Virus record (IMG/VR): IMGVR_UViG_3300024999_000030
Span: 186,001 to 250,000 of that record
DNA: 64,000 bases
Reading direction: 5' to 3' (one strand)
Shown: in pieces, positions 2 to 20,048 of the stretch
Layout: each line of letters starts with the position of its first letter
How positions within the stretch are numbered: position 1 is the first letter of the stretch
Made by a program: the position numbers and the translations under genes
The notes under the pieces: generated by a model
What the model was told of the DNA's origin: nothing
The model's database searches: none
Seen by the model: only the letters and a program-made list of their open reading frames with translations

Positions 2-556
2 TTTGGGAGAATCAAAAGTCACAGGAGGGTCCCACAGCTGGGATGTGAGAATGGTAAGGTTCAGTATCAAGTATACTGGCCTCGCCTAGCTGAGACCTCC
101 TGGTGGGATCCTGACGACCTTAAATCAGCTCACGAGTGGAAACACAAAAGGATGTTCATCTTGTGTGACCGAGTTTCGGACTGGCGAGGCAACTTGGGTA
201 CGATTGTTAGAATTAACAATCCTTCCCAAACCACAACTCAAGATAATTCAGATCAAATTCTTACCGTCTTATGGGACGATGGTACGAAAAATCTTATTGC
301 CCCCTGGCACATCCAACTCACAAGCCTTCCTTCTAAAGGAGATAACATGAACCCGAAAGATACCGATTCTTCCTCTTCAAATAGTACAACCCCCACCGCC
401 CATTTAGTTTATGGGAATGGCAAATCCTACTTCTTCTTAACCGAAGCTGCTGCGAGAGTCTTTGCTGAAAAACAAACCGCTGAAACTGGGGTTGATCATC
501 TTCTCTTTGAGAAAAAAGCCAAGTGTTCTCCCCACAGAAATGTAGCCTGGGAATAG
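2..556 (+). CDS. 5'-truncated SH3/KOW-like repeat protein with shared C-terminal module (internal start at 347)
   Basis: Frame is open from base 2 (FGRIKSH...YQVYW...LTVLWDDG). C-terminus (AEKQTAETGVDHLLFEKKAKCSPHRNVAWE) resembles those of 5687..7366 and 18731..19303. Confidence 0.7.
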   Translation, partial: FGRIKSHRRVPQLGCENGKVQYQVYWPRLAETSWWDPDDLKSAHEWKHKRMFILCDRVSDWRGNLGTIVRINNPSQTTTQDNSDQILTVLWDDGTKNLIAPWHIQLTSLPSKGDNMNPKDTDSSSSNSTTPTAHLVYGNGKSYFFLTEAAARVFAEKQTAETGVDHLLFEKKAKCSPHRNVAWE

Positions 557-1664
557 AAGACCATATGGACAGAGAAACGGTTACAGAAATTGGACTTTGG
601 ACTGTTCGCATCCTTCTTGTTATTGGAGGAATCGTGGGCGGGATCTTAGGTAGTCCAACAGTTATAGGTTTTTGTGTGGTTGGCCTAATGCTCACCATTT
701 TCTTCTTGTAGGCAACTATGAAACAAGTCATAGACACCACTAAAGTTTACGGTGCAATTGCCTTACTCTTGTTCTTTTCATTATGGTTATGGGAGCAATG
801 TTAGCTTCTGTAGCCTGTAGTAATTCTTCCACTCCCCCGGTTATTATCCCAGACACCTGGACGGTGTTCTATATTGGTGACGATGTACTTTGTAGAGGAA
901 CCCGCATCATTACCTATGAGGGCTGTGAGTATTTGATTACTGGGTTTCATGGTGGGTTTACTCTTTGCCATAAAGGAAACTGTAAAAAACCCCATTCACA
1001 TCTATGCTCCCGTTAAGAGGGAATCGGTAGGGCCATAATGCCAGCCTATTGCATTTGTATAGATAATGGCGTCAGTTGCAAACACCATGAGGGCTCTGGA
1101 TGTAAATTTCTTTCGGGAGATTGTGTTCCGATTGAAATGCAAGTCCCCAGTCAATCGTCTCGTGTTCTTTTGGTTGTTCCCATAGAAAACTGTCATGCAC
1201 CACAATTAGAACAACATGTGGTATTCTTTCATGGGAATGACTGGCATAAATCCATTTCCTAAAATCAGGGAGGATAACCACAATGCCCCTATGTAAAAAA
1301 TGCAGGGAATCTAAGGAACATTGCTTTCACACGACAGCCGACGAATGTACAAGGGTGATGAGACTCGCATACGGATATGGTAAGTGCGATAACCCTCAAG
1401 AACATCATGACTTCATTCCAGAGGAAACTTTGGAAGAAGAAGTTGTTAGACTGAAAAAAGAAGCGTGGGAGATAACAAAACAAAACACCGTTATTCATAA
1501 TCGTTTAACCGCGCTGGGGAAAACAGAAAGCACCTGAGAAAAGCTCTTTCGTTTTATGCTGAGGAGTCCAATTGGTTGGAACAGGAAACGGGTATCGGAA
1601 TGATACCCAGTGATGCTGTTTCTGACTCTGGTAAACATGCTCGTATTGCGCTGAGGGAGAAGCC

Positions 1665-1844
1665 ATGACCAAGTGGGAACACAAAGAAGTGACCTTTACG
1701 ACGGGTAACTTAGCAAACACACTGTCTAATTGGGGACGGCAGGGATGGGAATTGGTATCTGTTGTGAGATCAACAACCGCAGATCCCAATAATCGAGCCT
1801 ATCTCAAGAGGCCAGTCCAAGAAACCGATGAGACTAATTCTTAG
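1665..1844 (+). CDS. DUF4177-like small protein (59 aa, not in ORF track)
   Basis: Hand-translated MTKWEHKEV...LSNWGRQGWELVSV...AYLKRP matches the remembered DUF4177 pattern; GGAG upstream. Confidence 0.65.
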   Translation: MTKWEHKEVTFTTGNLANTLSNWGRQGWELVSVVRSTTADPNNRAYLKRPVQETDETNS

Positions 1845-3722
1845 TCTTCCCTTCGTCGTGTATCTCTACCGTCAGTATCTCTTTGCCAAAGCTTATTTAC
1901 TTTGGGAGATACTGAATGTCCAGGATCGTTGGTTGCTTGTGTGTCCCTTTGAACAGACAATCAACGATGAGTTCTGTGATATCATGGAGAGACTCGACTT
2001 CAAAGATGAGTACGACTGGACCTATGAGGAGTATTGTTCCGCTGCTAACAAGTTCTTAGATATTGGGCAGCAGAGCGATCCACCTACCTACAGGTACTTG
2101 TCAGCTGAGGATTATGAGGAGGAAAACGAAAATGCCATTTGACGAGAACACTAAGGTTCACACACACACTGGGTGGATGCCTCAGTGGCTGTACAATTTT
2201 GTGTATTACTCCAACAGTATAGATGAGAGTCTTTCAGAAAGAAAAACTCACAACTCTATAAATGTGGAGGGGTAGTATGCGACTAATCGAAGTGGCATAC
2301 TTCCCCATGGAAAATGATTTAAGTTATATGACGAGCTGCTTCATTGCTCCCGTCAATATTGCCAGTATCAGACCTCAATTGATTGATGGGGTTAGATTAT
2401 GGCGGATTCATATGAGCGATAAAGAACCCATCCTCGTTTCACCAACGGAGATGGAAAGAATTAAATTAATAACGAAGGAAACTTGAGGTTACGATGATTG
2501 ATTTAAAAGCAACCTTCGACAAATATGCTGACGAGTACATCAAGTTCGAGAATGTAGAACTAAAACTACATTCAAGGCCTGATGTTTGTGCCTTTCTTTT
2601 ACTGGATAAATTGGTTCCAGGAGAAGGACAGGACATTATTTCCGATGCCCAACGCGATGAGGTTTACCTGGACACGGATTGTGCGAAACTAGCTGAAGTC
2701 GCAACGGAAAGAGACATCTTAACTCTCATCCGATGCGGTGTCCAATACAACAGTAGTGTGGAAAGCCTGTGGATGTTTACTTAATCTTCAGGGAGGGCTA
2801 AAGTGAAAGAGCCACAGTGGGTAGAGCTTAGTAAACAAAAACCACCAGATGCAGCAGAGTGGGAACATAAGAGGTATTTGTGTTATCCTGGTTATGAAGT
2901 TTTAGATTATTGGGATGGCACCTTTTGGAGGTGGCACGCGGAAGACAATTCTAATGAGGAATGTAGAGTAACTCATTGGAAAGAGCTAACCCCACCCACG
3001 GACTTGAATAAACCTACCTCTAAGGAGGACTAAAGTGGACAAACAAATCGAAGAACTACTAACGGAATTAAACTCGGTTCGTGCTCTACTGGCTCAGTGG
3101 GTGAGCGCCTATGAAAAATATGGTATAATGGCCACCCCTCCAGGTAACCTGATGTATTCTCCTGACACTGTAGATAAATTTTTGTCCACTCTTGGTTATT
3201 CGAGGAGATATCTTGAGCGGGTAGCTTCTTCCACGAAAAAGATTACCTTTGAGGTATTTGATGGGGACAAGCCAGCCAAGTATCCAGACATCAAGGTTCA
3301 TCCATCCTGGAGTAATAACGTATTCTTCAGTTTCGTTGATGCCGAAGCATATGCTTTGAATTGGCTGGGTTGTTATTCTCCTGGAAAAGGAATCATTCAA
3401 CCGAATGTGCCCTATGATTATGATGGATGTGGGGACTGCGTCACAATTAAAACAATTCAAACAGAATAAATTGGAGACGAAACGATGCGAGTCCTAATCG
3501 TAGATAAATTCGGAGCGGTGGATTTAAAAGACAATCAAGACGCTGTGCCGAGAGTGGGAGATGCGGTGTATTTGAATTACACGCCTTTTCCTAAGGTTCA
3601 ATCGGTCACATGGTATCCAGAAAGAAAAATGATCCATAGCCTATATCCGACTATTACAGGATCGGATGTGGATGTTATTGTTTTCGTTGGATAAAACCTA
3701 ACCCCCCCTAAGGAGGTGTAAC

Positions 3723-4184
3723 ATGCTCGAAGTATCAAATGAGAACTCGGCATTCGGAATCATCAAGAAACTCATTAACTCTCCTTTTACTTTTCATCTC
3801 ACTGGCTCCCATTTCTTTGGGACCGCCAACGGAAACTCTGACATTGATTTCTTCGTGGAGCTTCCGTCTCATCTCGATTCCAACCAAGTTCAGTTGAATG
3901 ATTTTTGGTCCTTCTTGGAAGGTGATCTTGGAATGCATCGGGTGAATGGCGAAGGTTCTTATTCGGAAAGAGATCTGGAAGTTGCACATGTTTTTCAAAC
4001 AACTTTCGTGTCTCCTCCCATTCACATTCAAGTTGTTTTGGATGCGGAGATTAAGGTCATCGCTCAGGATATGATGAAGACACTTGGGGTTGTGCCTGAC
4101 AAACGTCGGGGAAGCTACCTTTGGGAAAAAGCTTACGATTATGCTCGAAAGCTTGACTCTCGACCCAAGTTGAAACAGAAGTAG
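3723..4184 (+). CDS. Minimal Pol-beta-superfamily nucleotidyltransferase
   Basis: hhhTGSxxxG...SDIDFFV motif (FHLTGSHFFGTANGNSDIDFFV); GGAGG SD. Confidence 0.75.
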   Translation: MLEVSNENSAFGIIKKLINSPFTFHLTGSHFFGTANGNSDIDFFVELPSHLDSNQVQLNDFWSFLEGDLGMHRVNGEGSYSERDLEVAHVFQTTFVSPPIHIQVVLDAEIKVIAQDMMKTLGVVPDKRRGSYLWEKAYDYARKLDSRPKLKQK

Positions 4185-4200
4185 GGCTGTAGAAAATTCG

Positions 4201-4240
4201 AGAGCCTCGCTTCGCTCGGTAACCTATAGTTTTCCGCCCG
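4201..4240 (+). repeat. Bipartite intergenic element, copy 1
   Basis: AGAGCCTCGCTTCGCTCGG-N15-CGCCCG, the same as 8473..8512 with identical spacing. Confidence 0.7.
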
Positions 4241-4251
4241 AGGAATAGACA

Positions 4252-4974
4252 ATGAAAGCAGGCGTCGTTTCTGATCTGCATTTTGAATTACAACAGGACG
4301 GAGGACTAACTCTACTTAAAGAACTACATAGGAACCTTGGTGGGATTGATATCTTAATCTTAGCTGGAGATGTATCTGAATCCAGGGATATCATTACTCA
4401 CCTTGAGTTCCTATGTGGTTTGTTTAAAGAGGTAGTATTCGTTCTAGGAAATCATGACTTGTTTCATGGGTCATTCTCTTCTGTTAGGAAAGACCTGAAG
4501 GATAGAGCACCCAAGAATCTGCATTTTCTAGACAACGAAGTTTATGAAGTTGGTGGCAGAAGACTTGTGGGGTCCACCATGTTCTATCCCCATCATTGGG
4601 ATAATCAATTCCATCATCGTGACATGGCTGACTTTGAGTGGATTAAGGGATTTGTAAACGATGTCTATGCAGAAAATGCTACGGCACAGTATTTTCTTAA
4701 GACTACTGTTCGTAGAGACGACATCGTTATCACCCATCACTTACCCACTCCACGCAGTATCCTTCCCGCATATTCGGGTCATCCTTTAAATCGATTCTTC
4801 CTCTGTGATATGTCGGATGTGATTGTTAATCAAGAACCGGCTATTTGGATTCATGGACACACTCATAGCAGTTTAAACTATAAACTGTTTGAGACCCAAA
4901 TAATCTGCAACCCCTTCGGGAACCCAGATGGTGTGAACAAGGATTTTGATCCAGGGTTTGTGATAGAAATATAG
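4252..4974 (+). CDS. Calcineurin-like metallophosphoesterase
   Basis: SDLH, LAGD, LGNHD, THH and HGHTH motifs in canonical order. Confidence 0.92.
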   Translation: MKAGVVSDLHFELQQDGGLTLLKELHRNLGGIDILILAGDVSESRDIITHLEFLCGLFKEVVFVLGNHDLFHGSFSSVRKDLKDRAPKNLHFLDNEVYEVGGRRLVGSTMFYPHHWDNQFHHRDMADFEWIKGFVNDVYAENATAQYFLKTTVRRDDIVITHHLPTPRSILPAYSGHPLNRFFLCDMSDVIVNQEPAIWIHGHTHSSLNYKLFETQIICNPFGNPDGVNKDFDPGFVIEI

Positions 4975-5406
4975 GAGTCGGCGATGCCTGGGTTTGGTAG
5001 TTTGCTTGCACAACTGAAAGAAGACATGGATATTTTCTTTAACTATCAGATTGATGGCCAATGTCAATCCTGTACTAAAATCGGGGCCGTCAACAACCAA
5101 CACATCTGTAAAAAGTGTAATGATACCGACGCAACAAGATCTACTCCAGTGAGGATGAATAATGGCTGACGATGCCGTATGGCTTATCTGGAGTATAGAA
5201 CACGATGCTTGGTGGAAGCCTTGCGAGAGAGGGTACACCAAAGATCGTGGCGAAGCTGGCAGATATACCTTTGCTGTTGCATGTAGTATCATGGAACAGG
5301 CTAATAGATATTCTGGTTCTGTTCCCAATGAGGCAATGGTAAAAGAGTAAAACTTTATAACATAGGGAGAAACAAAAAATGCGACTAGAACAATGGGCAA
5401 TCGTGT

Positions 5407-5670
5407 ATGCGAGTGATGACCCCTATACTTCCTCCTGAGCATAGAGGGCAAGCCTTTGACGGTAAGGTTTATGGTCACCCTAGGTTCAATGACGGTGATC
5501 GTATTACCACCTCAAATATTATTGAGGTGAAAAATGGTCGTTTCATTACTCAATCAGGTTCTGAGTATGAGTTAGGTGAAGTAGACCCAGCATACGAAGC
5601 CGCATTTCCTGGTGCGAAACAACGCGCTTTAGATTCACTATGTAAAGGTGTTACGAGTTCAAGTTCATAG
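5407..5670 (+). CDS. Conserved phage hypothetical protein
   Basis: GKVYGHPRFNDGDRITTS...TQSGSEYELG resembles a common small phage protein (from memory). Confidence 0.55.
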   Translation: MRVMTPILPPEHRGQAFDGKVYGHPRFNDGDRITTSNIIEVKNGRFITQSGSEYELGEVDPAYEAAFPGAKQRALDSLCKGVTSSSS

Positions 5671-5686
5671 AAAAACAGGAGTAAGA

Positions 5687-7366
5687 ATGGAACTAGAACT
5701 TAAACAGAAAAAAGAACGGGCACATGAAGCTTTGGCGCGATTATCTGGAATTGCCATCAGAGAAACAGTCCGAGGAATTGCTACTATCTCCATTAGGGAA
5801 AAGGTCCTAGAGGAAATTCGTGGCTATGAAGTTGATATTCTAAACTTAATCATAGCCGTGGATACATCAGTTGAATCGAAAACATCTAATGTTAAATTCA
5901 AAATGGGAGATAGAGTAGGCTGTAACTCTGGACCAAAGGGAGGAACCATTTGTAGTGAGGTCTTCTTTATTCGTGGTGAAGAAGCCTACATGGTTCGATG
6001 GCCAAAGGAATATGGAACACAAGGCTGTTTTGCCTTTCAGCTCTACCATTTGTTTAGTTTTAAGGTTGGAGATTGGGTACGGTTCATTGATCGTCCAGGA
6101 GTGTCTGGTACAATTACCAATATCAATACCAATTCATACTTTAGATACGAATTCATACCAAGTGATTCTACACTTAAATGTCCCAAATGGTATGGAGGAG
6201 ATAAAATTGAATTGGTTCCAGAATTCCAAAGCGGGGATATAATTCGGGTTATAGATAAACCCGAAAGAACGGGAACAGTTATTGGCGAGATTTGCCAAAG
6301 AAGCTTAATTCAAGTAAAGTGGGCAGAGGAAACTTCGGCAATTAGAAGAGAGTACATAGAACACACCACCAAATTTCACAAAGGAGACAGGGTCCGTCAT
6401 AATATGGATCCCCGTTTAGTGGGAGTAATTGAGGAAGTTGTTGGGCATTCCCATACAGCTTTTTATAAGATTCTTTGGGACGATAATCGAAGAGAAGCTT
6501 GCTGGGAAAACCAACTCGAAATTTCAATAAAACCTATCCCGATTTTAGTAAAGCCTAACCTGGGATTCAAAGTTGGAGATAAGGTTGCAGAGGTGGGTAG
6601 TTCCGCTGAAGGAGTAATTACCGATGTTGGCTACGGGTATGGCCCAACATACACGGTTGATTGGGACGTCAACTTAAAGAGTGAACATAAAGGTGCAAAA
6701 CACTATACTCATGAATTGCGTCTCTTATCCAAACTTGAAACCAAACCCACTTCAAACAAATTCAAAGTCGGAGATAAAGTATATCGTAACGATATTCCAT
6801 CGGACAGGGGAAAAATTATTACCGACTGTCTAAGCCCAAACAATTTATATCTTATTGAATGGGAAGATAAACGGGGTAACTGGAAAGAACATTGTTATGA
6901 TACAGAAATTAGTCTTCTACCTCCAAGCGAGTTTAAAGTAGGAGACAGAGTAGGTAGTATCGCAAGTAATGCTGAGGGAACAATTTCCTATGTCGACTAT
7001 AGCTCTAACTACGATTATGCCTATATAATCGATTGGGATAATTTAGAGCCCTTCGAAAAAAGTGCCGGGACACTTTATAGCTCTTTTGAGTTACGCCACC
7101 TGTCTAAACCTGACACCAAATCCAACACAAAAGGAGAAGATGAAATGAGGCACACAACATATCCTCCGTTTAACGGCAATGAAATCGATACAAGTAAACC
7201 CTTCTGGATTATTTTCTGTCCTCATTGTAACAATGTTACTTTGAAGCAGACAGAAGCGGATGCGAAGGCAGAAGCCGAGCGTCTCACTCAACTCACGGGG
7301 GAGGCTCACCTTCTCTTTGAGCAAAAGGGAATGTGTTCTCCTCAGAAACAGGTAACCTGGAGTTAA
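5687..7366 (+). CDS. Multi-repeat SH3/KOW-like protein (about 7 FKxGD(R/K/W)V units) plus C-terminal module
   Basis: Repeated FK(V/M)GD(R/K/W)V...G.I......Y.(V/I).W units; GGAG SD before ATG 5687; second SD+ATG at 7145. Confidence 0.75.
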   Translation: MELELKQKKERAHEALARLSGIAIRETVRGIATISIREKVLEEIRGYEVDILNLIIAVDTSVESKTSNVKFKMGDRVGCNSGPKGGTICSEVFFIRGEEAYMVRWPKEYGTQGCFAFQLYHLFSFKVGDWVRFIDRPGVSGTITNINTNSYFRYEFIPSDSTLKCPKWYGGDKIELVPEFQSGDIIRVIDKPERTGTVIGEICQRSLIQVKWAEETSAIRREYIEHTTKFHKGDRVRHNMDPRLVGVIEEVVGHSHTAFYKILWDDNRREACWENQLEISIKPIPILVKPNLGFKVGDKVAEVGSSAEGVITDVGYGYGPTYTVDWDVNLKSEHKGAKHYTHELRLLSKLETKPTSNKFKVGDKVYRNDIPSDRGKIITDCLSPNNLYLIEWEDKRGNWKEHCYDTEISLLPPSEFKVGDRVGSIASNAEGTISYVDYSSNYDYAYIIDWDNLEPFEKSAGTLYSSFELRHLSKPDTKSNTKGEDEMRHTTYPPFNGNEIDTSKPFWIIFCPHCNNVTLKQTEADAKAEAERLTQLTGEAHLLFEQKGMCSPQKQVTWS

Positions 7367-7950
7367 ATCTTTTCGGGAGAAAACATGGGACCTTTGCAAT
7401 GTAACATGTTGGAAGGAAGGGATGTTTCCACTCTTTCGGCTGCTATTAATGAATGGCTGAAAGCTCATCCGTATTGCTCCATTGAACATATTTTTCAATC
7501 TCAAAGTCAAACTTCTTTTCCTACAGACGGAAAGGTAGTGGTTTCCATCTGGTATCGAGATCAAAATAAAAAATGAAAGTTGAACAAGAGGAGATACACT
7601 CTCTCCCCATCGGTGTTGTTTTGCTTTTCATTTTACTTGCTATCCTCTGGTTCCTAAAACACTAAACCCACCACAAGGAGATGACATGAAGAAAGTTGAT
7701 GGAGTTGATCTTTCGGAGCTTGTTAAAGAAACCGCCACCGCAGTACTCAGCGAGAAACGCAAGGGTATTGCCGGGTTAGTGAAAGAGTTGATGCAAAAGT
7801 CAGAATCTCTCGCAAAGGAAATTGAGAAGGGAGAGATTGAACTCAACAAGAAGAAAGCGAATTTAACAGCTGTGAACGACAAGCTGAAGAAGCTTGGTGA
7901 GGGTGACTGGTCTGTTCTTCAAGACATCGCCCCGCCTCAGTAAAAACAAA

Positions 7951-8025
7951 AGACTTCTGGTTCCGATATGTTCACGAGTTATATACTCCACAGGAAAAAC
8001 GCCGAGTAGCCTGCGATAGAAGTCT
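7951..8025 (+). ncRNA. Candidate three-way-junction structured RNA
   Basis: AGACTTCT/AGAAGTCT closing stem with inner GAGT/ACTC and CAGG/CCTG stems; intergenic. Confidence 0.4.
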
Positions 8026-8169
8026 CGACATAAGTTTAACTCAAAACTCACGAAGTACCTCACAAGGAGATGAAAATGAGAATTTCTCACGTGCCACCCC
8101 AGTTTGTTCCTGGCCGCTTCAATGATGAGTTTGTATTTGTTTCTCCTGTTGTTAAGAGCGGGAGATAAG

Positions 8170-8463
8170 ATGGAAGCAGTGAAGAAACATCTTGATTTAT
8201 TGGGTCATTTGGTTGAGGACAAAGTTACTGGATTTAAAGGCATTGTAGCTTCCATCAATTTTGAACTCTACGGTTGCATTCAAGCGGTGGTAAATCCAGG
8301 GGTTGACAAAGATGGGAACATCAGAGATTCTCGATGGTTTGATGTGAATAGATTGAGGGTGTTGTCCAGTAGTCCAGTAATGAATGTTCCTAATTTCGGT
8401 CAACTCACGACTGCGAATGGCGATCAAGGGGCGGATGAAAAACCACTCTTTGATAAACCTTAA
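8170..8463 (+). CDS. Conserved phage hypothetical protein (SH3-like)
   Basis: LGxxVxDKVTGFKGIVxS...YGCxQ..V.P...FDxxRL pattern; GGAG SD before ATG 8170. Confidence 0.55.
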   Translation: MEAVKKHLDLLGHLVEDKVTGFKGIVASINFELYGCIQAVVNPGVDKDGNIRDSRWFDVNRLRVLSSSPVMNVPNFGQLTTANGDQGADEKPLFDKP

Positions 8464-8472
8464 ATAGATTTA

Positions 8473-8512
8473 AGAGCCTCGTTCCGCTCGGCACAAACTG
8501 TCTCATCGCCCG
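8473..8512 (+). repeat. Bipartite intergenic element, copy 2
   Basis: AGAGCCTCGTTCCGCTCGG-N15-CGCCCG. Confidence 0.7.
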
Positions 8513-10418: not shown

Positions 10419-10452
10419 CAGTAAGTCAATGTCGCAGGGCGTTGGCTTACTG
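10419..10452 (+). promoter_or_regulatory. 15-bp hairpin upstream of the first Cys-family cluster
   Basis: CAGTAAGTCAATGTC-gcag-GGCGTTGGCTTACTG pairs fully with G-U wobbles. Confidence 0.6.
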
Positions 10453-10482
10453 TAATGTGGGTATAACCGGAGGAGGTAAACG

Positions 10483-10773
10483 ATGAATGGATTCACGAAC
10501 CATTATATTTCTGCAATGCAAGACTTCATCGCTAACCCCTGTGTAAAACGATGGCGAGGGGTTGAGAGATTAAGTGATCTTAATTGTAAATGTTTACTTT
10601 TAGGGGTTTCTCAAATAGGCTCCTGTGTCGGCTGTCCATTTTATTCTTTTCATCCGAATGGCAGTGCCTGTCCTCGCTTAAATACAGCCTCCAGAAAAAA
10701 ATTAAATTTGTTTATTCCAAGGTTAGTTCTTGCTTGTTTAGAAGCTATTGCTTATTTACAGGCTAAGGAGTAA
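10483..10773 (+). CDS. Four-Cys (FIxNP) family paralogue 1
   Basis: DFIANP...CKC...CVGCPF...CPR...LACLEAIAYL. Confidence 0.8.
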   Translation: MNGFTNHYISAMQDFIANPCVKRWRGVERLSDLNCKCLLLGVSQIGSCVGCPFYSFHPNGSACPRLNTASRKKLNLFIPRLVLACLEAIAYLQAKE

Positions 10774-10775
10774 AT

Positions 10776-11156
10776 ATGGCAAATTTAAGAAGGGTTACCG
10801 ATCAAAATCGTCAGGAACAAATTAAAGCCTTTGAGGCCTTTATTGATAATCCAACTTTGGAAAATCGGAAACACCTGGCGAAAGTGATGCTTTTTGATAG
10901 TGGGCGAGATGGCAAACGAGGCTTTTGTTCGCTTTCTCGGCGAGAAGATGAAGTCTATCCTATTGTTGAGGCTTGTGAGGGGTGCCCGTTTTTTACAAGT
11001 GGTCTCAAAAGTTATTGTCCAAGAACAGAATGGATAATGGAAGAGGACTTTCCTTCGTTAACCTTAAATCGTCGTGAAGAAATACAACAAGGCCAGGTTG
11101 CTGTTTTTATTCTGGCGTGTGTCCAGGCGATTGCTCACCTTAGGATTAAAGAGTAA
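10776..11156 (+). CDS. Four-Cys family paralogue 2
   Basis: AFIDNP...FCS...CEGCPF...YCPR...LACVQAIAHL. Confidence 0.8.
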   Translation: MANLRRVTDQNRQEQIKAFEAFIDNPTLENRKHLAKVMLFDSGRDGKRGFCSLSRREDEVYPIVEACEGCPFFTSGLKSYCPRTEWIMEEDFPSLTLNRREEIQQGQVAVFILACVQAIAHLRIKE

Positions 11157-11459
11157 ATGAAAGATATTTTGCAAAACTCTCTAAATGCTTTGCAAAATTT
11201 TATTGATAATCCTAATCCAGAAACCTTTAAACAGGTTTACGAATCTTTTGCAGTCTTTAGAGTATGTCCTCTTGCCACAAAATATGAAAATATAGATATG
11301 TATCATTGTGAAAATTGTCCATTTCCCCGTGTGTTTAATCGTACTCGACTATTACAATGCCTTAGACAATATGGATATAGCTTTGATTCATCGAAATATT
11401 TAGGCCAAATGCTTGTTGCTTGTATTGAAGCAAAGGTTCTTCTGGAGGGCAGTAAATGA
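11157..11459 (+). CDS. Four-Cys family paralogue 3
   Basis: NFIDNP...CPL...CENCPF...QCL...VACIEAKVLL. Confidence 0.8.
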   Translation: MKDILQNSLNALQNFIDNPNPETFKQVYESFAVFRVCPLATKYENIDMYHCENCPFPRVFNRTRLLQCLRQYGYSFDSSKYLGQMLVACIEAKVLLEGSK

Positions 11460-11809
11460 CGAGAATAGAAATACTTAAATCACAAATCAAAGCTCTTCAA
11501 TCTTTTATTAACAACCCAATTAAAAATAATTGGAATAATATTTCATTAGCTTTTACTCAGGGATCAGCAGGAGGTCAAAAATGTACTCTAGCTGGCCCCG
11601 ATAATTCATATGGAACATGTCGTTCGTGTGTTTGGGCTAAAATAGATTATACCTACCCACGAAGTAAACGGTTTCGTAAGTTGTTACTTGGACACACCAA
11701 TAGAGTAAAATACTGTGGACCAGCATATCCAGAGACCGAACAACTTCCTTCGGTTATCCTAGCCTGTATTGAATCTGTGGCTAAACTGGAGGTTCTTTTG
11801 GAGGAATAA
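11456..11809 (+). CDS. Four-Cys family paralogue 4
   Basis: SFINNP...KCTL...CRSCVW...YCGP...LACIESVAKL. Confidence 0.8.
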   Translation: MTRIEILKSQIKALQSFINNPIKNNWNNISLAFTQGSAGGQKCTLAGPDNSYGTCRSCVWAKIDYTYPRSKRFRKLLLGHTNRVKYCGPAYPETEQLPSVILACIESVAKLEVLLEE

Positions 11810-11810
11810 G

Positions 11811-12221
11811 ATGAAAAGAGAGAACATGGTAAGTGCCCACAATCTCAAACAACAGATTAGGGCGCTGGAAAACTTTATTTTTAATCCAATTAAATCCAAC
11901 TGGGCAGTTGTACATCGAGTTTTTTCTTATGATAACTATCAAGCCCATAAAAAATCCAACATAAAAGAAAACAGAAGTTGTTGTTCAGTTGCCTTTCTTT
12001 TATCCAGAAAAACCCTAACTCAAGATCAAGATGATAATTTCGCGTGCTCTACTTGTCCATTTTTCAAATTTCAAAATATTTGTTGCCCAAGAGCCGGCAT
12101 CAATGAAGACAGATGGCTAGAAGCAAAGACTTGGGAAGCCGTTCAAGAAAATCTACCACAAATTATTAAGAATTGTATTGAGTCTCTTGGGCTTATTAAA
12201 ACAGCCGAGGAGGGTCAATGA
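11811..12221 (+). CDS. Four-Cys family paralogue 5
   Basis: NFIFNP...SCC...CSTCPF...CCPR...KNCIESLGLI; GGAGG SD before 11811. Confidence 0.8.
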   Translation: MKRENMVSAHNLKQQIRALENFIFNPIKSNWAVVHRVFSYDNYQAHKKSNIKENRSCCSVAFLLSRKTLTQDQDDNFACSTCPFFKFQNICCPRAGINEDRWLEAKTWEAVQENLPQIIKNCIESLGLIKTAEEGQ

Positions 12222-12595
12222 GAAAAAGAATTCTTTTAGAGGAAGTGAATCATATTAATAAGGTCATTATTCTTTTAGAAAATTTTATTAATGATCCGAC
12301 AATACCTAAACTTCGGATGATTAGTGATAGTCTTAGAAACTATCCATATAGAGAAAATAAAATTTTTTCTTGTTTTATTAATGCCATCGTATTTACCGGA
12401 AATGAATATGAAAACAAAAGATGTAAACATTGCCCATGTAAGAGTGAACCGCTTATCAGTATGATAAACTGCTATGGTCAGCCTGGACTTTGTTTAGAGG
12501 ATCCAAGTGACGATATATTTTTTTGTAAAGACATTCCCGTTACCATTAAAGCCTTGTTGGAAATTATCGGACTATTAAAAACCAAACTCCCATAA
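12218..12595 (+). CDS. Four-Cys family paralogue 6
   Basis: NFINDP...SCF...CKHCPC...NCY...LLEIIGLL. Confidence 0.75.
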   Translation: MRKRILLEEVNHINKVIILLENFINDPTIPKLRMISDSLRNYPYRENKIFSCFINAIVFTGNEYENKRCKHCPCKSEPLISMINCYGQPGLCLEDPSDDIFFCKDIPVTIKALLEIIGLLKTKLP

Positions 12596-12596
12596 T

Positions 12597-12947
12597 ATGA
12601 AAGGAGAAGATATGTTTGAGTTAACTCAAGAATATATGGAACAGCTTGTAATTGACATGGAAACTTTCATATCTTCTCCTACAATAGCAAATTGGAAAAT
12701 CTTAACCTCCCGTATGAGGATAGCAAGTAAATGTCCATTCTCCATAGCAATAGATAATTGCTGTCCGCCTGGGTGGCCACGATCAGCCTGTAGAGCTTGT
12801 GGATTTGATGCACCATCTTCAATAGACCCATGGCTCGATGTTGAGACGGGCTGCAACTATCCGAGAGATGATAATTCTAAAGCTGAGGTTATACATTTAT
12901 TTATTCAGTTTATTGCTATGTATAAAATTTTAATTAAAGGAGATTAG
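12597..12947 (+). CDS. Four-Cys family paralogue 7
   Basis: TFISSP...KCPF...CRAC...GCN...FIQFIAMY. Confidence 0.7.
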   Translation: MKGEDMFELTQEYMEQLVIDMETFISSPTIANWKILTSRMRIASKCPFSIAIDNCCPPGWPRSACRACGFDAPSSIDPWLDVETGCNYPRDDNSKAEVIHLFIQFIAMYKILIKGD

Positions 12948-14019
12948 AAAATGAGTACGAAGAAAGTCAAACAAGAAATAGAAACTTTAATACGCCTTTC
13001 AAGTTTCGGGCCTCGACCGGATACTCCCGAGGGTGAAGCGTGGGGAAGGGGCGCTCGCTGGGGTTACGAACAGGCCATGAGCAGATCCACCGATAAAAAA
13101 GCAGCCGCTAAGGATGCAGCAAAAACCATTGCTTCGATGGCCGAAGCTAGTATCAAGCAACTCTTTATGTCTAATTTTATTAGACATAACAAACGGGTGG
13201 AACTTCTCAAAGAGCTTTCTGATGCCGTTGCTACTATCGAAGAGGGTCTTGAATATATCAGGGAGGAATAAATGAAGCGAGATTTCTACGCCGATCTTCA
13301 TGATGACATTATCGATGACGAATACGATAATTCTGAAAACATTTCTACATCTCAAGCTTCTCCCATTCGTCACCCTGAAGTAACGTCCAAATCGGGAACA
13401 AGATATATTTTTTTCCATAACCGCCGGCGCAAACATCATCTTCCGAGTTGGATGATAAAGCTTCAACATTTGGATTGGTGGGGCAAACACGACGGAGAAT
13501 ATTCTTTAGGGCGAATCCAACGAAGGCTTGATGCCCTGTTAATCTGCCCTCCTGTTAAAATTATGTCCCATTACCGTGTATTGGAAATTAATTATTTACA
13601 TGATAGGGGACTGTGGTTGGATTTTTCTAGCGCATATAGTTATGCGTTAGGAGTTTATCCCGACAACTGTTTGCATGATTCTTTTCGTTTTTCATCGTTG
13701 TTTTACTCAGGGCTTTGGGGGCCAGATCTTGAGAGTATAAGAAAAATTAAGTTAAAAGAGTTTCAAGACGCAGTTAAAGAGGCTCTTCCTGAATATGAAG
13801 AATTTTGGCCTAGCAAAATTGAAAGCTTGAAAAGAGCAATTACCTCTGCTCAAAAACAAACCGAAATTTTGCGAATTAAGAGAGAGAAGCGAATCGCCCA
13901 TCTCAAAGAGACCCATGGTAAAACTCCAAGATACTTAGATCATCAGCGCGTTCTATATGGAGTGGATGAGTTTGCTGATCCATATGAAGAAGATTCATCC
14001 AAAGAAGAAAGGGAGGAAC

Positions 14020-14508
14020 ATGATCGAGAGAATCGTGGTTTTCTCACGACGACAGATTGAAGAGCTTGCTTACAAGCCCTTACTTGAATTGGAAGAAGTG
14101 CGGGTGTCCACTGGACCATATGCCATTATCAGCATTACCGGTTCAGATGATGACCTTGCTCAGCTACCCCTTAATGCGGACTTCGTTCTTCGCTTAACCT
14201 TCGATGATATTCTTGAAAATATGAACGGTAAAGAAATTGATATCATTGGTGGTGGAACACTTAAACTTAAATTCATTACGCGAGACGACGCTCTTTCGAT
14301 TACTCATTTTTTTGAAGAAATAAAAGATAAGGTTTCTTTACTCGTTGTTCATTGTGGGGCTGGTATTTCCAGAAGCGCAGGCGTCGCTATTGCCATTGCC
14401 GAACAAGTAGATATTTCAATGATGGGTCATCTTATTTCTCAACATGAGTTTTTTAATCGCGATGTCTATGCGTTAATCAAACAAACTTTCAACTCCCATA
14501 AGGAGTAA
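14020..14508 (+). CDS. Protein tyrosine/dual-specificity phosphatase-like protein
   Basis: HCGAGISRSA = HCxxGxxR P-loop; GGAGG SD before ATG 14020. Confidence 0.85.
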   Translation: MIERIVVFSRRQIEELAYKPLLELEEVRVSTGPYAIISITGSDDDLAQLPLNADFVLRLTFDDILENMNGKEIDIIGGGTLKLKFITRDDALSITHFFEEIKDKVSLLVVHCGAGISRSAGVAIAIAEQVDISMMGHLISQHEFFNRDVYALIKQTFNSHKE

Positions 14509-16993
14509 CGATGATTAATGTAATTATAACAATCGTGTTGGTATTGGTAATATTGGCCATTTGTGTTGGGTTCTATTATTTCGGGCGGTTCGAGGGTAAG
14601 ACTCTAGCTGAAATGGATTCCCTTAATAAGGCCCGAGAAGAAAATCTCAAAGCCATGAAGTCCTATCAAGACGCCCATAAATTTTATGAAGACACTACAA
14701 TCATGATTGAAAATTGGCGTAGAGAACTGAAGATTAGATGTGAAGACAATCTCAAGGCTGTTAAGCGAATTTCTAGTTTAAGTGAGACTAGATTAGATTA
14801 GATAACTTTGTAAATATAATGACATGAATAAAAAATGCAACGAATGTAAAGAAGAAAATAGTATTTTTAAAATATCCCTCGCATGTATAAAGTACCGTAA
14901 AAATGGATTAGGTAAACGCGGACACTGTTCTTTTTGTGAACATCTAAAGCGGTATCATAGCAAGAGAGACAAGGGAGAAAGAAATGAAAAAGAAACCGTT
15001 TCAATATCATGCCTCAATGGAAATGATGGGCGACGACACTTGCATGCGCACCACTAATATTGAGATGCGTATGAATCAAGATAAAAAGCGTGGTAGTAAT
15101 TCTAAAAAGAAAACCCAAACCAAGAAGCAAAATCCCAAGAGGAGTCGCTGATGCCTAAGAACGGACAAGGTACCCGAGTATTTTTATCATTTCGTAAATC
15201 TCCTCTCGGTATTATCGAAAGGGAAGAAGATAAGGATTTGAATCGCATGGATGTTTTTAATCCCGCTGCGTCAAAGAAACCAGAGACCGGTAAAGTGGTT
15301 CGTCTTAGTCGTGTGCAAGCAAGCATTCTTCGTAACCTTCATCGTATGAAAAATGGTATTTAAAAAGATATGTCATACGAAGGCTATGATCAATATCTGT
15401 GTGGGAATGGTCATTATTGGATACAAGATTGTAACAACGATAATGAAGAGTGTCCGGTATGTAAAGGAAAGTTTGTGTGGAGGAACGGTGTAAATGAAAC
15501 TAATTTTGACGGATGGGGTTATATCGACATGGAAAAGTTTCTTGTCACCCCAGCTGTTAATGTTACTTGTCCTACTTGTCACCATGAAAGCGAAAACACT
15601 CCTCCCATTTATCGCGTTCCTACTCAAGATGAAGCTAATGATGCTAAGACTTGTAGGGATGAAAACGGTAATATTATTTCTTGCAGTGAGGAGTTAAAAA
15701 GATTGGAGGCAGAAAATGATCAAGTACACTGATTCAAATGGTGAAACTTATGCTGTAGTCACCAATAGCAGAAAATTTGCCATTGCCCGCCTGAATGATG
15801 ACGGTAGTATTAAATATTTTTGTGCGGGTATGGATACTTTTCCAGACGGTGCAAGAATGTTTAAGCGAGGTGCGTTCTTTGTTAATTACTATCCATCACT
15901 TGACTTAGCTCAAAATGAACTGCAAACATATGTTGACTCTGAACAAGTGAAAGAGTGGGAAGTGGTTTCCGAACCGGAGATTAAAAATGATTAAAGTGGT
16001 TAAGACTTTCGGAGAGGTCCCAGTGGGATGGTGGGTTGAAAGTAACGATGGTCAAGTTAAACAGGCTGATGATTTTATGATCAGTCCCTACGGTTGGCCA
16101 TCGTCGCTTCCTGTAAAACATGGCATCTGTTCTAATGTTTCAGATGAACTCAAATATCTTATCAGAAAGGATGGAGCGTGATATGGAAAAAGTCGCGGAA
16201 GTTCTACAGTCTATTGCGGCACAGCTTGGAACAACGGTTGAAAATCTTTGGCCCTATATTGTAAGGCAACAGATCATTGAAGGCTGGAGTGGTATTATTA
16301 CTATTTCCATTCTTTATCTAATTTTCTTGGTTGTTTTCTTAGCGATCAGGAAAAAGGATGGAGGGGTTTGTGGAAATAATCCAAACGCATATGGGGTAGT
16401 AAAAATTGTCCTTGGTATTTTAACTGCAATTTTAACTCTCACTACTCTCTGTTGTATTCATGTTTTAATTTCTAAAATTATCAATCCAGAGTACGGAGCG
16501 TTAAAAGATTTAATGAACATGGTACACGGATATCGTTAAGGGTAAATACATGGAAACTAAACCCTTAACTCTCAGCAAAGGCTTTGCTAAAGTAAGTAAG
16601 GTCATTACGGTTGGAACGACTGGAAGAATTTTTCTAGTCAAAATGAACGAGCCATTGGGAGAAGCTAATTATGTGCTTATCCTTAACAAGTCTCGTGACC
16701 GTGAGGCTGTAAAAGATAAGATGCAAGCGGCTAGAAAAGCAAAAGGAATTGCCTGTAATAGAGGGATGAATAATCAAACTCGTAAGTCTTGGTGGGCTTG
16801 TTGGGGTTTTCCGAATAGGGAAAAAGCAAGTAAGGCTCTTCTTTTTGCTCAGAAGAATTTGTTTAAAGCTTCTGCTAAAGTTGGTAATGCTACTGTTTCC
16901 CTATTTGATGAAGTTCATCAGGACAGGGCGAAAAATTTCTTTATTGCTCATGCCAAATACCAGAAAAACTTTTCTGATAATTTGGATTAAACA

Positions 16994-17536
16994 ATGAAAA
17001 AGAAAATTTCAGAAATCAAAAATCAAATTACCAAAACTATGGGTAATATTATTAAAATAAATGGCAAGTGTCCCAACAGAGAATTATCGCGCCCAGATAC
17101 AATTGAAGAAATGGTATTTGAATTTCCACTCCTCGACGATATGGATGCTATGATTCCTAGTTCAGCCGTTCAAAATATTAAAACAATGATCACTAATTTA
17201 GATAAAGCCCAAGCCACTATAGAAATTAATAAAATTAAATTATCGGCTATGCAGGAAGTAATTAAAAATTTACCCAAAGATAATGAAATTTATTTCGATA
17301 CGGATTGGAATGATGATAACGATATTCAGCGTTGGGATTTTAATATTTCTACTTCTCATATGGAAACAGACGAAGAGTATTTAAAAAGATTAAAAGAACA
17401 TGAAGAGATGTTAAAGGATAGGGCAGCTAAAGCAGCTTTAAAAGCTAAGAGATTGGACACCGTCAGAGGACTTAAGGCTCGGGTTAAAGAAATGGAAGCT
17501 GTTATGGTGCAACACGGTTTGAATGTACCAGAATAA
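16994..17536 (+). CDS. Hypothetical coiled-coil protein, tandem paralogue A
   Basis: Shares N-terminal (I...G K.P.R.LS) and C-terminal patterns with 17548..18120. Confidence 0.55.
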   Translation: MKKKISEIKNQITKTMGNIIKINGKCPNRELSRPDTIEEMVFEFPLLDDMDAMIPSSAVQNIKTMITNLDKAQATIEINKIKLSAMQEVIKNLPKDNEIYFDTDWNDDNDIQRWDFNISTSHMETDEEYLKRLKEHEEMLKDRAAKAALKAKRLDTVRGLKARVKEMEAVMVQHGLNVPE

Positions 17537-17547
17537 AAGGTGAAAGA

Positions 17548-18120
17548 ATGAAGAAAATTAAACTCGATAAACAAATCATTGAAATTAAAGAGGCCGAAAA
17601 TAAAATTTTAGAACTTGGGGGTAAAGTTCCTAAGCGTGGCCTTTCTAAATGGAAAAAATTAGATCAATTTAAAATCAAATGTCCCTGCTTTAACGATGGT
17701 GTTACAGGGGTTACTGAGGTCATAAAAGATTTAAAGGATCTTGTTAATTCCATAGACGAAAGTATGTCTTCTATGGAAATAGCTAAGCTTAAAGCCAACG
17801 CTCTAATGGAGACGATAAAAAGTGCCGATGAAGATTCCAGGGTTTCTGTTAAAGTTTTCTGGGACGACGATAGTGATATCAATGGTTCTAGTAATCTCCA
17901 ATGGGATGAATTTCAAATTGAAATTGCTGAACCCAAAACCAATAAAGAATATTTAGAAGCTTTAAATAAATCAATACAAACCCGTACTGAGGCCATGGAA
18001 AAACAACTTAAGAAGAAAAAGAAAAAAGAAACTCTTTCTGATGTTAAAGCTAAACTTAAAATGGCTGAGGATTTTATTAAAGCCAACGGACTTAAGTTAT
18101 CACAAGATAGGAATAATTAA
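17548..18120 (+). CDS. Hypothetical coiled-coil protein, tandem paralogue B
   Basis: Similar to 16994..17536 (WDDDSD/WNDDND; EYLxxL; VKAxxKxxE). Confidence 0.55.
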   Translation: MKKIKLDKQIIEIKEAENKILELGGKVPKRGLSKWKKLDQFKIKCPCFNDGVTGVTEVIKDLKDLVNSIDESMSSMEIAKLKANALMETIKSADEDSRVSVKVFWDDDSDINGSSNLQWDEFQIEIAEPKTNKEYLEALNKSIQTRTEAMEKQLKKKKKKETLSDVKAKLKMAEDFIKANGLKLSQDRNN

Positions 18121-18546
18121 TTGCTGGGAAACTTTTTTGCTTTACTAATTCTCGGCCACATGGTAGGTGATTATTTACTACAAAACAAGTGGATGGCAAT
18201 GAATAAATCAGCCAGCCATTTTAAATGTGCGGTACATTGCCTACTGTATACCTTAGCGGTGGTTTGTTTTACATGGCCAGAAATTCATGGTTTATTATGG
18301 ACCTCTATTGTATTTGTTTCTCATTACCCAATTGATAGGTGGGGCCTTGCGGACAAATGGTTGGGAATGATAAATAGCCGTAGTCTAAAAGACTTCATTG
18401 TGTTTGGTAAGTATGATATTCCGATGGAATACGACTATGAAAATTATCACGCTCTTCGTGCTGGATTTACATCTATAGTGTATGTGGCCACCGACAACAC
18501 GATGCACATTGGTTTAATGGTTCTTGGCTGGTACTTAGTGAAGTAG
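18121..18546 (+). CDS. DUF3307-family membrane protein
   Basis: GHxxGDYLLQ...HCLLY...SHYxID...DNxxH His/Asp pattern in hydrophobic helices. Confidence 0.75.
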   Translation: MLGNFFALLILGHMVGDYLLQNKWMAMNKSASHFKCAVHCLLYTLAVVCFTWPEIHGLLWTSIVFVSHYPIDRWGLADKWLGMINSRSLKDFIVFGKYDIPMEYDYENYHALRAGFTSIVYVATDNTMHIGLMVLGWYLVK

Positions 18547-18730
18547 GAGCTGAAATGAAATTTAATAAAGGACACATCTTAGAGGCTGGAGATAGACTCC
18601 ATACGATGATTATTTTATCGGAGGAGTTGCTTAGAAATCATCCAGCACTTAAAAAAGCCAAATTAAACAAACGCTTTAAGAAAGTGATTAAAAAACTTAA
18701 TAACATGTATCAAAAAGTTTGGCAATTAAA

Positions 18731-19303
18731 ATGAAATCTCAGTCACTGAAACATAAATTCACTTACGAATGGATAGCGATATTTGGTTATGTTCCAGTTA
18801 AAAAAGACTTTGTCGCATACAATAGAAATGGTATAATTTTTCAAGGTCGTGTAATTTCTCCTCGCCCCACTTATTATGGAAACATTACCGTTGACCCTGG
18901 CGTTGGTTTAACTGAGCCCTTTCACATAGTCGGCGCGGCTGAGGTAATCTCAATTTTAACTTCAGATGGTAAGCGCTTTGCAAACGAAGAAAATAAATCT
19001 TCAGAAGGAATTTTTCCTGCTGGCTGGCAAATTCCTGTTGGTTGGCGAATTATGGGACCTAAGAAACAAGGAGGAGAAACGATGTGGTCTGATTATCCGA
19101 ATTTTAACCAAAACGGTGTTGACACAAGCGTGAATGATTTTTGGATTATTTTTTGTCCCGTCTGTAACAATGTAACTCTCGCCAAAGACGAGGCGGCGGT
19201 GAAGACCAAAGCAGAAGAGCTTACTGAGAAAAGCGGAAACCCTCATGTAATTTTTCACTCGAAGGGAGTTTGTACTCCAACCCGTAATGTGGTTTGGAGC
19301 TAA
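18731..19303 (+). CDS. Protein with shared C-terminal module (internal start at 19082)
   Basis: FWIIFCPVCNNVTL...CTPTRNVVWS nearly matches the end of 5687..7366. Confidence 0.7.
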   Translation: MKSQSLKHKFTYEWIAIFGYVPVKKDFVAYNRNGIIFQGRVISPRPTYYGNITVDPGVGLTEPFHIVGAAEVISILTSDGKRFANEENKSSEGIFPAGWQIPVGWRIMGPKKQGGETMWSDYPNFNQNGVDTSVNDFWIIFCPVCNNVTLAKDEAAVKTKAEELTEKSGNPHVIFHSKGVCTPTRNVVWS

Positions 19304-20035: not shown

Positions 20036-20048
20036 AATAGGAAATGTT

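What the first reader, a model, noticed from the sequence alone, without database searches (positions are those of the whole stretch)
347..19303. Three genes share a C-terminal module that has its own in-frame SD+ATG (nested long and short isoforms)
Seen: the ORFs 2..556, 5687..7366 and 18731..19303 end in a related ~70-aa module (two share FWIIFCPxCNNVTL; all share A..E.L...G..H..F..K..C.P...V.W). In each, a strong SD (AAAGGAG, AAAGGAG, GGAGGAG) sits just before an in-frame ATG at the module start (347, 7145, 19082). Inference: each locus makes both a long fusion and a free module. The module could be an assembly or targeting tag that co-assembles variable SH3-like N-terminal payloads.
Basis: partly seen in the sequence, partly recalled or inferred. 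Interest (0 to 1): 0.65.

Follow-up and report, generated by a model that had tools for sequence, protein, structure and literature searches.

The report
Shared tail module with internal start
Three genes of a 333-kb groundwater phage end in the same small protein module, and each has a conserved ribosome-binding site and start codon just before it, so each gene probably makes both a long protein and the free module; phage lysis enzymes are known to do this, but not this protein family.

Summary
Three + strand genes end in a related 55-70-aa module: ORF1 (443 aa, only its tail is in the window), ORF2 (559 aa) and ORF3 (190 aa). Each has a strong Shine-Dalgarno (SD) sequence 5-8 nt before an in-frame ATG at 347, 7145 and 19082. 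In the whole 332,730-bp genome only six deep-internal in-frame ATGs have such an SD, and three of them are these.

The family is tiny. All four relatives that carry the module's N-terminal extension keep both an open frame across the junction and the SD+ATG. This holds despite about 42% protein identity, a GC shift from 38% to 51%, different amino acids over the SD, and once a different codon phase. All nine Gly codons inside the SDs are GGA. No relative has a stop before the module.

The module is modelled as a small beta-beta-alpha-beta unit with no known family. A homodimer prediction passed its controls (0.56 against 0.00).

The N-terminal parts are SH3-like repeat arrays in ORF1 and ORF2 only.

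Most likely this is functional internal initiation giving long and short isoforms that pair through the module. That matches the two-polypeptide endolysin genes, here in a new protein family. Translation and binding were not shown, and the function is unknown.

The parts
2..556 (+). 3' part of ORF1. The whole gene is G000:185225-186556, 443 aa: six SH3-like repeats, a linker and the C-terminal module.
335..341 (+). Internal Shine-Dalgarno AAAGGAG of ORF1, 5 nt before the ATG at 347
347..556 (+). Nested short ORF of ORF1 (69 aa). This module variant has no CPxC knuckle.
5687..7366 (+). ORF2 (559 aa). Its own strong 5' SD is AGGAG. It has an about 65-aa N-terminal region, seven SH3-like repeats, a linker and the module.
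5891..7108 (+). Seven tandem SH3-like (MIB/Tudor/KOW-type) repeats of ORF2
7130..7136 (+). Internal Shine-Dalgarno AAAGGAG of ORF2, 8 nt before the ATG at 7145
7145..7366 (+). Nested short ORF of ORF2 (73 aa): a flexible tail of about 18 aa with YPxFNxN, then the beta-beta-alpha-beta module with C25, C28, H55 and C64
18731..19303 (+). ORF3 (190 aa). Its start overlaps the stop of the upstream gene (ATGA) and has no SD of its own. It has an unassigned beta-rich N-domain, a disordered linker and the module.
19070..19076 (+). Internal Shine-Dalgarno GGAGGAG of ORF3 (AAGGAGG from 19068), 5 nt before the ATG at 19082
19082..19303 (+). Nested short ORF of ORF3 (73 aa)

Best explanation
Each of the three genes is a two-product gene. 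Ribosomes starting at the 5' start make the long protein: N-terminal payload, a flexible linker, then the C-terminal module. Ribosomes binding the conserved internal SD in the linker start at the in-frame ATG and make the 69-73-aa module alone.

The module is a small beta-beta-alpha-beta(-beta) unit. Most copies carry a Cys-Cys-His-Cys set that looks like a metal site. It is predicted to pair with itself through its most conserved stretch (G..H..F..K..C.P). Long-long, long-short and short-short dimers could therefore form, in proportions set by the two ribosome-binding sites.

In ORF1 and ORF3 the 5' start has a weak SD or none, while the internal one is near-consensus, so the short form may be in excess and cap the long form.

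Shown: the sequence features, their rarity in this genome, and their conservation.
Inferred: use of the internal start, dimerisation, and stoichiometry.
Unknown: the biological function.
For: - Rarity: the three sites are 3 of only 6 deep-internal in-frame ATGs in the genome with an SD of at least 6 nt.
- Conservation: the ORF3-like P0002 (42% identity), the ORF1-like P0007, the ORF2-like P0003 and the L007 gene all keep a GGAG-type SD 5-8 nt before an ATG at the aligned position. Meanwhile the encoded residues change (KGDN, KGDQD, KGEDE, QGGNE, QGGET, QGGKT, MEERL). In P0002 the SD sits in another codon phase.
- Synonymous sites: all 9 Gly codons inside these SDs are GGA, although GGA is only 22-32% of Gly codons. 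The P0002/P0007 contig has 51-52% GC against 38% here.
- Boundary: protein identity jumps at the internal Met. For 25 aa upstream against 25 aa downstream it is 6 vs 22 (ORF2/P0003) and 6 vs 16 (ORF3/P0002).
- Position: the Met lies in a low-confidence linker, residues 87-135 of the ORF3 model. The first ~18 aa of the module model are also poorly defined: residues 1-8 fall below pLDDT 50, and the first strand begins at residue 21.
- Open frame: it is open across the junction in all 7 genes. No free-standing module gene exists in 1.8 or 5.8 billion proteins. The single 78-aa call (P0004) is a gene caller choosing the internal start of an open frame.
- Homodimer test: score 0.56 against a best control of 0.00. 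That mark was reached by 20 of 30 proteins solved as pairs of one chain and by 1 of 23 solved as single chains. The runs share at least 82% of their contacts and the partner's pLDDT is at least 74. The interface is residues 52-66 plus 21-26 and 41-49.
- Local mRNA folding is weaker than the gene average at 6 of 7 internal starts, which is weak support.
- The same arrangement is experimentally established in phage endolysins (PMC4777826, PMC9430671).
Against: - There is no expression, ribosome or protein evidence. Only DNA runs from groundwater hold this phage.
- The family is tiny, with about five distinct relatives, and all copies descend from one ancestor, so the cases are not independent.
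- A more distant member (P0006) has the module but no in-frame start codon before it. The free form is therefore not needed by every family member.
- The dimer is a model's own confidence score, obtained with my own shallow alignment.
- The module has no known fold relative that would indicate a function.
Confidence: 0.65

Rival explanations
1. Fossil signals. The module was once a separate small gene with its own SD and ATG, and was fused to upstream genes by loss of their stop codons. The internal SD+ATG would then be a leftover that is no longer used.
For: The module is joined to at least three unrelated N-terminal parts: SH3-like arrays, ORF3's unassigned domain and a UPF0150/HicB-like domain. 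This fits a cassette that was moved about. P0006 has lost the start.
Against: A leftover should have decayed. The SD and ATG survive 42% protein identity and a 13-point GC shift, at synonymous positions and in a changed codon phase, while the neighbouring linker residues are unrecognisable. No relative with the presumed ancestral state, a stop before the module, was found.
Confidence: 0.12
2. The SD-like sequence acts during elongation, not initiation. It would pause ribosomes at the domain boundary so that the N-terminal part folds before the module is made, and the ATG is simply a conserved Met.
For: The site lies exactly at a domain boundary in a disordered linker.
Against: The ATG is kept in 7 of 7 genes at initiation-type spacing of 5-8 nt. 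A gene caller picked it as a start. From general knowledge, SD-induced pausing has been disputed as an artefact of ribosome profiling.
Confidence: 0.08
3. The free module is made, but it acts on its own, for example by binding a host or nucleic-acid target. The long forms would be tethered versions, and the module would not pair with itself.
For: Many small uncharacterised phage proteins of 50-100 aa have a similar predicted shape. In P0006 the module sits where HicB-type antitoxins usually carry a DNA-binding domain (plus general knowledge of HicB architecture).
Against: The homodimer prediction passes with its interface on the most conserved residues. This rival is compatible with internal initiation and differs only in the last step.
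Confidence: 0.15

Closest known systems
Two-polypeptide endolysin genes with an in-frame internal translation start site: CTP1L, CD27L, CS74L, LysP7951, LysIME-EF1, phi2638A (PMC4777826, PMC9430671, PMC7098653, PMC12203907)
   Same: A phage gene has an RBS and an in-frame start in the linker before the C-terminal domain. The short product is that C-terminal domain. In several cases the short product multimerises with the full-length chain through that domain. Pinto et al.'s screening criteria are met here: the iTSS is an outlier within the gene, is not within 20 aa of either end, and is not inside a domain.
   Different: There is no peptidoglycan hydrolase and no cell-wall-binding domain. The shared domain is a roughly 55-aa beta-beta-alpha-beta unit with no family. 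Three paralogous genes of one genome carry it behind different N-terminal parts. The host is unknown. Nothing was tested at the bench.
Classical nested in-frame phage genes: lambda C/Nu3, T7 gene 4A/4B, phiX174 A/A* (from general knowledge, not checked here)
   Same: One reading frame gives two products that share a C-terminus, through an internal start.
   Different: Those short forms are large functional parts of an enzyme or scaffold. Here the short form is a small module shared by several genes.
DUF2188 (PF09954), small uncharacterised bacterial and phage proteins
   Same: The predicted shape is similar: TM 0.56/0.57 over 52 residues. It is also the nearest named cluster by language-model features, at 0.78.
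   Different: The Pfam model matches neither the modules nor anything in the genome at E <= 1. Both resemblances are below the levels the tools call reliable.
SH3-like beta-barrel repeats of the MIB/HERC2, Tudor and KOW kind (N-terminal parts of ORF1 and ORF2 only)
   Same: A profile of 19 repeats hits MIB1 (E 4.6e-6), uL24 and SPT5 KOW domains and a PCL Tudor domain in the PDB. Pfam SH3_15, MIB_HERC2, SH3-C_UBE2O and YccV-like appear below their cut-offs.
   Different: No Pfam gathering score is reached. The arrays have 1 to 7 or more copies. The strong-looking CV39L lectin hit is a short YLVxWxD motif summed over seven blades, not a domain match.

Membership tests
Two-polypeptide genes with an in-frame iTSS (endolysin type) | An in-frame start codon preceded by an RBS that stands out from the rest of the gene | tested here: met
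   The sites are 3 of the 6 such sites in the whole genome. The SD is 6-7 nt at spacer 5-8.
Two-polypeptide genes with an in-frame iTSS (endolysin type) | The iTSS lies between domains and not within 20 aa of either end | tested here: met
   The Met lies in a low-confidence linker. 69-73 aa remain downstream and 117-486 aa lie upstream.
Two-polypeptide genes with an in-frame iTSS (endolysin type) | Two polypeptides are actually produced | not testable with these tools
   No RNA, ribosome or protein data exist. Only groundwater DNA runs hold the phage.
Two-polypeptide genes with an in-frame iTSS (endolysin type) | The short product multimerises with the full-length chain through the shared domain | tested here: inconclusive
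   The homodimer model scores 0.56 against a best control of 0.00. The mark was reached by 20 of 30 solved pairs and 1 of 23 single chains. Contacts agree by at least 82% and pLDDT is at least 74. This is a prediction only.
Two-polypeptide genes with an in-frame iTSS (endolysin type) | A peptidoglycan hydrolase domain plus a cell-wall-binding domain | tested here: not met
   No such Pfam or PHROG match was found in any of the three proteins.
DUF2188 (PF09954) | A match to the Pfam model at its gathering score (22 bits) | tested here: not met
   There was no match at E <= 1 in the proteins or in the six-frame genome.
DUF2188 (PF09954) | The same fold | tested here: inconclusive
   Atlas shape match has TM 0.56/0.57, 52 residues aligned, rmsd 2.4. 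This means little for so short a domain.
Lar-like restriction alleviation proteins (phrog_6422 / Pfam Lar_restr_allev) | A significant profile match | tested here: not met
   phrog_6422 matches at E 0.073 for the ORF2 module only. There is no Pfam hit.
SH3-like repeats (Pfam SH3_15 / MIB_HERC2) for the N-terminal arrays | A match at the Pfam gathering score | tested here: not met
   SH3_15 scores 18.2 bits against a cut-off of 24, and MIB_HERC2 scores 14 against 33.5. A profile search against the PDB does reach MIB1 at E 4.6e-6, so the resemblance in fold class is likely but membership is not shown.

The most novel reading that the evidence does not exclude
The module is a common pairing plug of a jumbo-phage protein set. 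Because its interface residues are nearly the same in the three paralogues, long forms of ORF1, ORF2 and ORF3 and their free modules could pair in any combination. The free modules, made from the stronger internal ribosome-binding sites, would act as caps that set how many SH3-like arrays are joined. That would be a translationally tuned, combinatorial assembly system outside the lysis enzymes.
Probability: 0.18. Interest if true: 0.65.

Novelty: new variant of a known kind. Interest (0 to 1): 0.45.

Why it matters
In-frame internal starts that give a free C-terminal domain are documented mainly for endolysins of phages of Gram-positive bacteria.

Here the same logic appears in a protein family with no annotation, three times in one huge phage genome. 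The comparative evidence for selection on the ribosome-binding site itself is unusually clean.

If confirmed, it would show that this coding trick is a general way for phages to set the stoichiometry of assemblies. It would also give a handle on a group of 'hypothetical' jumbo-phage proteins.

It also flags a practical point: gene callers report either the long or the short form, never both (P0004).

Tried and rejected
- **Module family:** Pfam and PHROGs give only sub-threshold zinc-ribbon, Lar-like and phrog_17352 hints. A PDB sequence profile search found nothing. Foldseek against the PDB found nothing at E <= 0.001. VIA-align wide gave a best Z of 4.0, with only generic small alpha/beta matches. 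BFVD returned only uncharacterised small phage proteins at E 0.02-0.2. The DUF2188 lead failed the sequence test.
- **More relatives:** scans of viral contigs, metagenome contigs and genome contigs found only copies of the same phage, or nothing. One alignment was too divergent to scan with. Megablast against GenBank phages gave no match.
- **Spurious hits:** P0008 and P0009 from the representative search are repeat proteins and were dropped.
- **ORF3 full-length model:** too poor for a fold search, with pLDDT 51.
- **CV39L lectin hit of the repeat profile:** rejected as a summed short motif.
- **Expression evidence:** there are no RNA runs. Laying contigs from four DNA runs showed identical sequence and no variants, which adds nothing beyond reproducibility.
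- **Local mRNA folding at the internal starts:** only a weak trend.
Full report
**Where this is.** The window is G000:C1:186001-250000 of a 332,730-bp virus record that CheckV rates complete. This is a jumbo phage. It is held by groundwater metagenomes from three studies. About 88% of the genome is coding under table 11, 367 of 402 crude gene calls lie on the + strand, and GC is 38%. Megablast found no GenBank phage like it.

| Gene | SD (coordinates) | ATG | Spacer |
|---|---|---|---|
| ORF1 | AAAGGAG, 335-341 | 347 | 5 nt |
| ORF2 | AAAGGAG, 7130-7136 | 7145 | 8 nt |
| ORF3 | GGAGGAG, 19070-19076 | 19082 | 5 nt |

- ORF 2..556 is the tail of a 443-aa gene that starts 776 nt before the window.
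- The C-termini are truly related. An HMM built from the three and run over all six frames of the genome finds these three and nothing else. A protein search of the genome agrees.
- ORF2 and ORF3 share FWIIFCPxCNNVTL. All three share AE..T...G..H..F..K..C.P...V.W.
- ORF1's module has lost the CPxC knuckle.

**Is it more than chance?** I counted in-frame ATGs lying at least 40 codons from either end of a gene and preceded, at spacer 4-10, by at least 6 nt of the GGAG/GAGG-type SD.
- The whole genome has 6 such sites among 1,422 ATGs and 65,861 codons.
- Three of the six are the module starts.
- The same SD strength occurs at only 71 of 402 first-ATG gene starts, so these internal sites rank among the best ribosome-binding sites in the genome.

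**Relatives.** An exhaustive profile search of 1.84 billion representative proteins gave only nine hits, two of them spurious repeat proteins. The real relatives are:
- P0002: ORF3-like, 42% identity over the whole length.
- P0007: ORF1-like, on the same 22.7-kb contig as P0002.
- P0003: ORF2-like, with three repeats instead of seven and a module 88% identical.
- P0004: called as a 78-aa protein.
- P0006: a more distant member whose N-terminal half resembles UPF0150/HicB, below the Pfam cut-off.

Scans of viral, metagenome and genome contigs added only further copies of the same phage.

- No relative has a stop before the module. The 'free' P0004 is a gene caller's choice. Its frame is open upstream to an ATG that overlaps the previous gene's stop, and the upstream part carries two weak F-x-K/Q-G-D repeat starts.
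- A search restricted to short proteins among 5.8 billion sequences found only P0004.
- All seven genes that carry the module's N-terminal extension keep SD+ATG at the aligned position: AAAGGAG in ORF1, P0007 and ORF2; AAGGAGG in P0003, ORF3 and L007; GGAGGAG in P0002. The spacers are 5-8 nt.
- The residues encoded over the SD differ: KGDN, KGDQD, KGEDE, QGGNE, QGGET, QGGKT, MEERL. In P0002 the motif lies in another codon phase, (AT)G GAG GAG, against GGA GGA G in ORF3. The nucleotide motif is what is kept, not the peptide.
- All nine Gly codons inside these SDs are GGA, although GGA makes up only 22-32% of Gly codons in these genomes.
- The P0002/P0007 contig has 51-52% GC against 38% here.
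- Protein identity jumps at the Met. For 25 residues upstream against 25 downstream it is 6 vs 22 for ORF2/P0003 and 6 vs 16 for ORF3/P0002.
- P0006 has the module core but lacks the YPxFN extension and has no in-frame ATG, GTG or TTG before it. The internal start therefore belongs to one clade of the family, not to every member.

**The two starts compared.**
- ORF2 and P0003 have strong 5' SDs.
- ORF1 and P0007 have only GGGG-type sequences.
- ORF3 starts at an ATGA overlap with the previous gene and has no SD.
- P0002 is similar to ORF3: its start lies inside the 3' end of the upstream gene and only a weak GGGA-type sequence precedes it.

The internal sites are thus as strong as, or stronger than, the gene starts. 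By inference, the short form would be at least as abundant as the long one. Local mRNA folding around the internal ATG is weaker than the gene's average in six of seven genes. It falls in the least-structured quarter of in-frame positions in five (0.26 in one of these). This is only weak support.

**What the parts are.**
- *Module.* With an eight-row alignment it is modelled at mean pLDDT 78.7 as strand 21-25, strand 30-34, helix 37-51 and strand 56-59, plus a less certain C-terminal stretch. No secondary structure is assigned before residue 21, and only residues 1-8 fall below pLDDT 50.
- *Possible metal site.* C25 and C28 (in the hairpin), H55 and C64 are kept in most members. H55, C64 and W72 are invariant even where the knuckle is lost.
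- *No family or solved fold matches the module*. The nearest shapes are many small uncharacterised phage proteins and a DUF2188 cluster. The DUF2188 model finds nothing in this genome.
- *N-terminal parts of ORF1 and ORF2.* These are arrays of a roughly 55-aa repeat beginning F-K-V-G-D: six in ORF1, seven in ORF2, three in P0003 and at least five in P0007. A profile of 19 repeats reaches MIB1, KOW and Tudor domains in the PDB, and Pfam gives sub-threshold SH3-like hits. They are most likely SH3-like barrels. The apparently strong CV39L lectin hit is a short motif summed over seven propeller blades and was discarded.
- *N-terminal part of ORF3.* It does not match this repeat. Its model is poor (pLDDT 51), showing a helix and six strands followed by a disordered stretch, residues 87-135, that contains Met118.

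**Pairing.** A homodimer prediction of the module scored 0.56 (median of three runs) against 0.00 for the best of three controls.
- The mark was reached by 20 of 30 proteins solved as pairs of one chain and by 1 of 23 solved as single chains.
- The runs agree in at least 82% of contacts, and the partner's pLDDT is at least 74.
- The counts hold only roughly, because my own alignment was used.
- The interface is residues 52-66, the most conserved stretch (G..H..F..K..C.P), together with 21-26 and 41-49. H55 of one chain lies against residues 63-64 of the other.
- This supports binding; it does not show it.

**Most likely mechanism.** Each gene gives a long protein and the free module from one mRNA by two independent initiations. 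The module pairs with itself, so the free form can pair with, and possibly cap, the long form.

The closest documented parallel is the group of endolysin genes with an internal translation start site. In those genes the free C-terminal domain is made from an internal RBS and start codon and assembles with the full-length enzyme (CTP1L, CD27L and CS74L: PMC4777826; a survey and LysP7951 with its 1:5 complex: PMC9430671). The features used in that survey to call an iTSS are met here: it is an outlier within the gene, it is not near the ends, and it lies between domains. The defining lysis domains are absent, so this is not an endolysin. It works like one in its coding logic only.

**Rivals.**
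- Fossil ribosome-binding sites left by old gene fusions. The synonymous-site and phase-shift conservation argue against this.
- An elongation pause site at the domain boundary. The invariant ATG at start-type spacing argues against this.
- A free module that acts alone without pairing. This remains open and differs only in the last step.

**Limits.**
- No transcript, ribosome or protein data exist for this phage.
- Contigs from four DNA runs are identical over ORF3, which shows only that the sequence is reproducible.
- The family is very small and all copies share ancestry.
- The function of the long proteins is unknown.

**Verdict.** The nested-isoform reading is well supported by comparative evidence but is not demonstrated. 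The kind of arrangement is known, and this is a new variant in an unannotated jumbo-phage family. Interest is moderate.

Noticed in passing
window 10483-12947 and 19941-20360; also L007:838-1573: There is a tandem array of at least seven paralogous genes of about 100-125 aa, plus one more just after ORF3. Each has an N-terminal F-I-x-N-P-like motif and a CxxCPF-like motif, and none has a Pfam match. Two members also lie directly downstream of the module gene in the relative L007, so the neighbourhood is conserved.
   Followed up: partly
window 16994-17536 and 17548-18120: Two adjacent paralogous genes (180 and 190 aa), predicted to be largely helical and Lys/Glu-rich, with no family. They lie just upstream of the DUF3307 gene and ORF3.
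   Followed up: no
window 3723-4184, 4252-4974, 13957-14508, 18121-18546: These are the few genes with a family hint in this stretch: a nucleotidyltransferase (NTP_transf_2, E 4e-5), a calcineurin-like metallophosphoesterase (E 6e-14), a dual-specificity-phosphatase-like protein with an HCxxGxxRS loop (E 7e-5, below cut-off), and a DUF3307 membrane protein (E 2e-11). In the P0006 locus an NTP_transf_2 gene also lies directly upstream of the module gene.
   Followed up: partly
G000:C1:173256-173627 (outside the window), internal ATG at 173463: This is one of only three other deep-internal in-frame ATGs in the genome with a strong SD (TAAGGAGG, spacer 6). It lies in a 123-aa ORF and leaves 54 aa downstream, so it may be another nested pair or a mis-joined pair of genes.
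   Followed up: no
window 7140-7148: An out-of-frame ATG-AAA-TGA mini-ORF overlaps the internal start of ORF2 (ATG at 7140, stop overlapping the ATG at 7145). It is absent from the ORF2-like relative P0003, so it is probably incidental.
   Followed up: partly
L005 and L012 (contig Ga0071344_1000829, 22.7 kb): This relative carries the ORF1-like and ORF3-like genes about 11 kb apart, against 18 kb here. It has no ORF2-like gene between them, and its GC is 51-52% against 38%. ORF2 may be a lineage-specific gain or loss.
   Followed up: partly
whole window: Cumulative GC skew rises steadily across all 64 kb and nearly all genes are on the + strand. This is consistent with one long co-directional transcription and replication block.
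   Followed up: no
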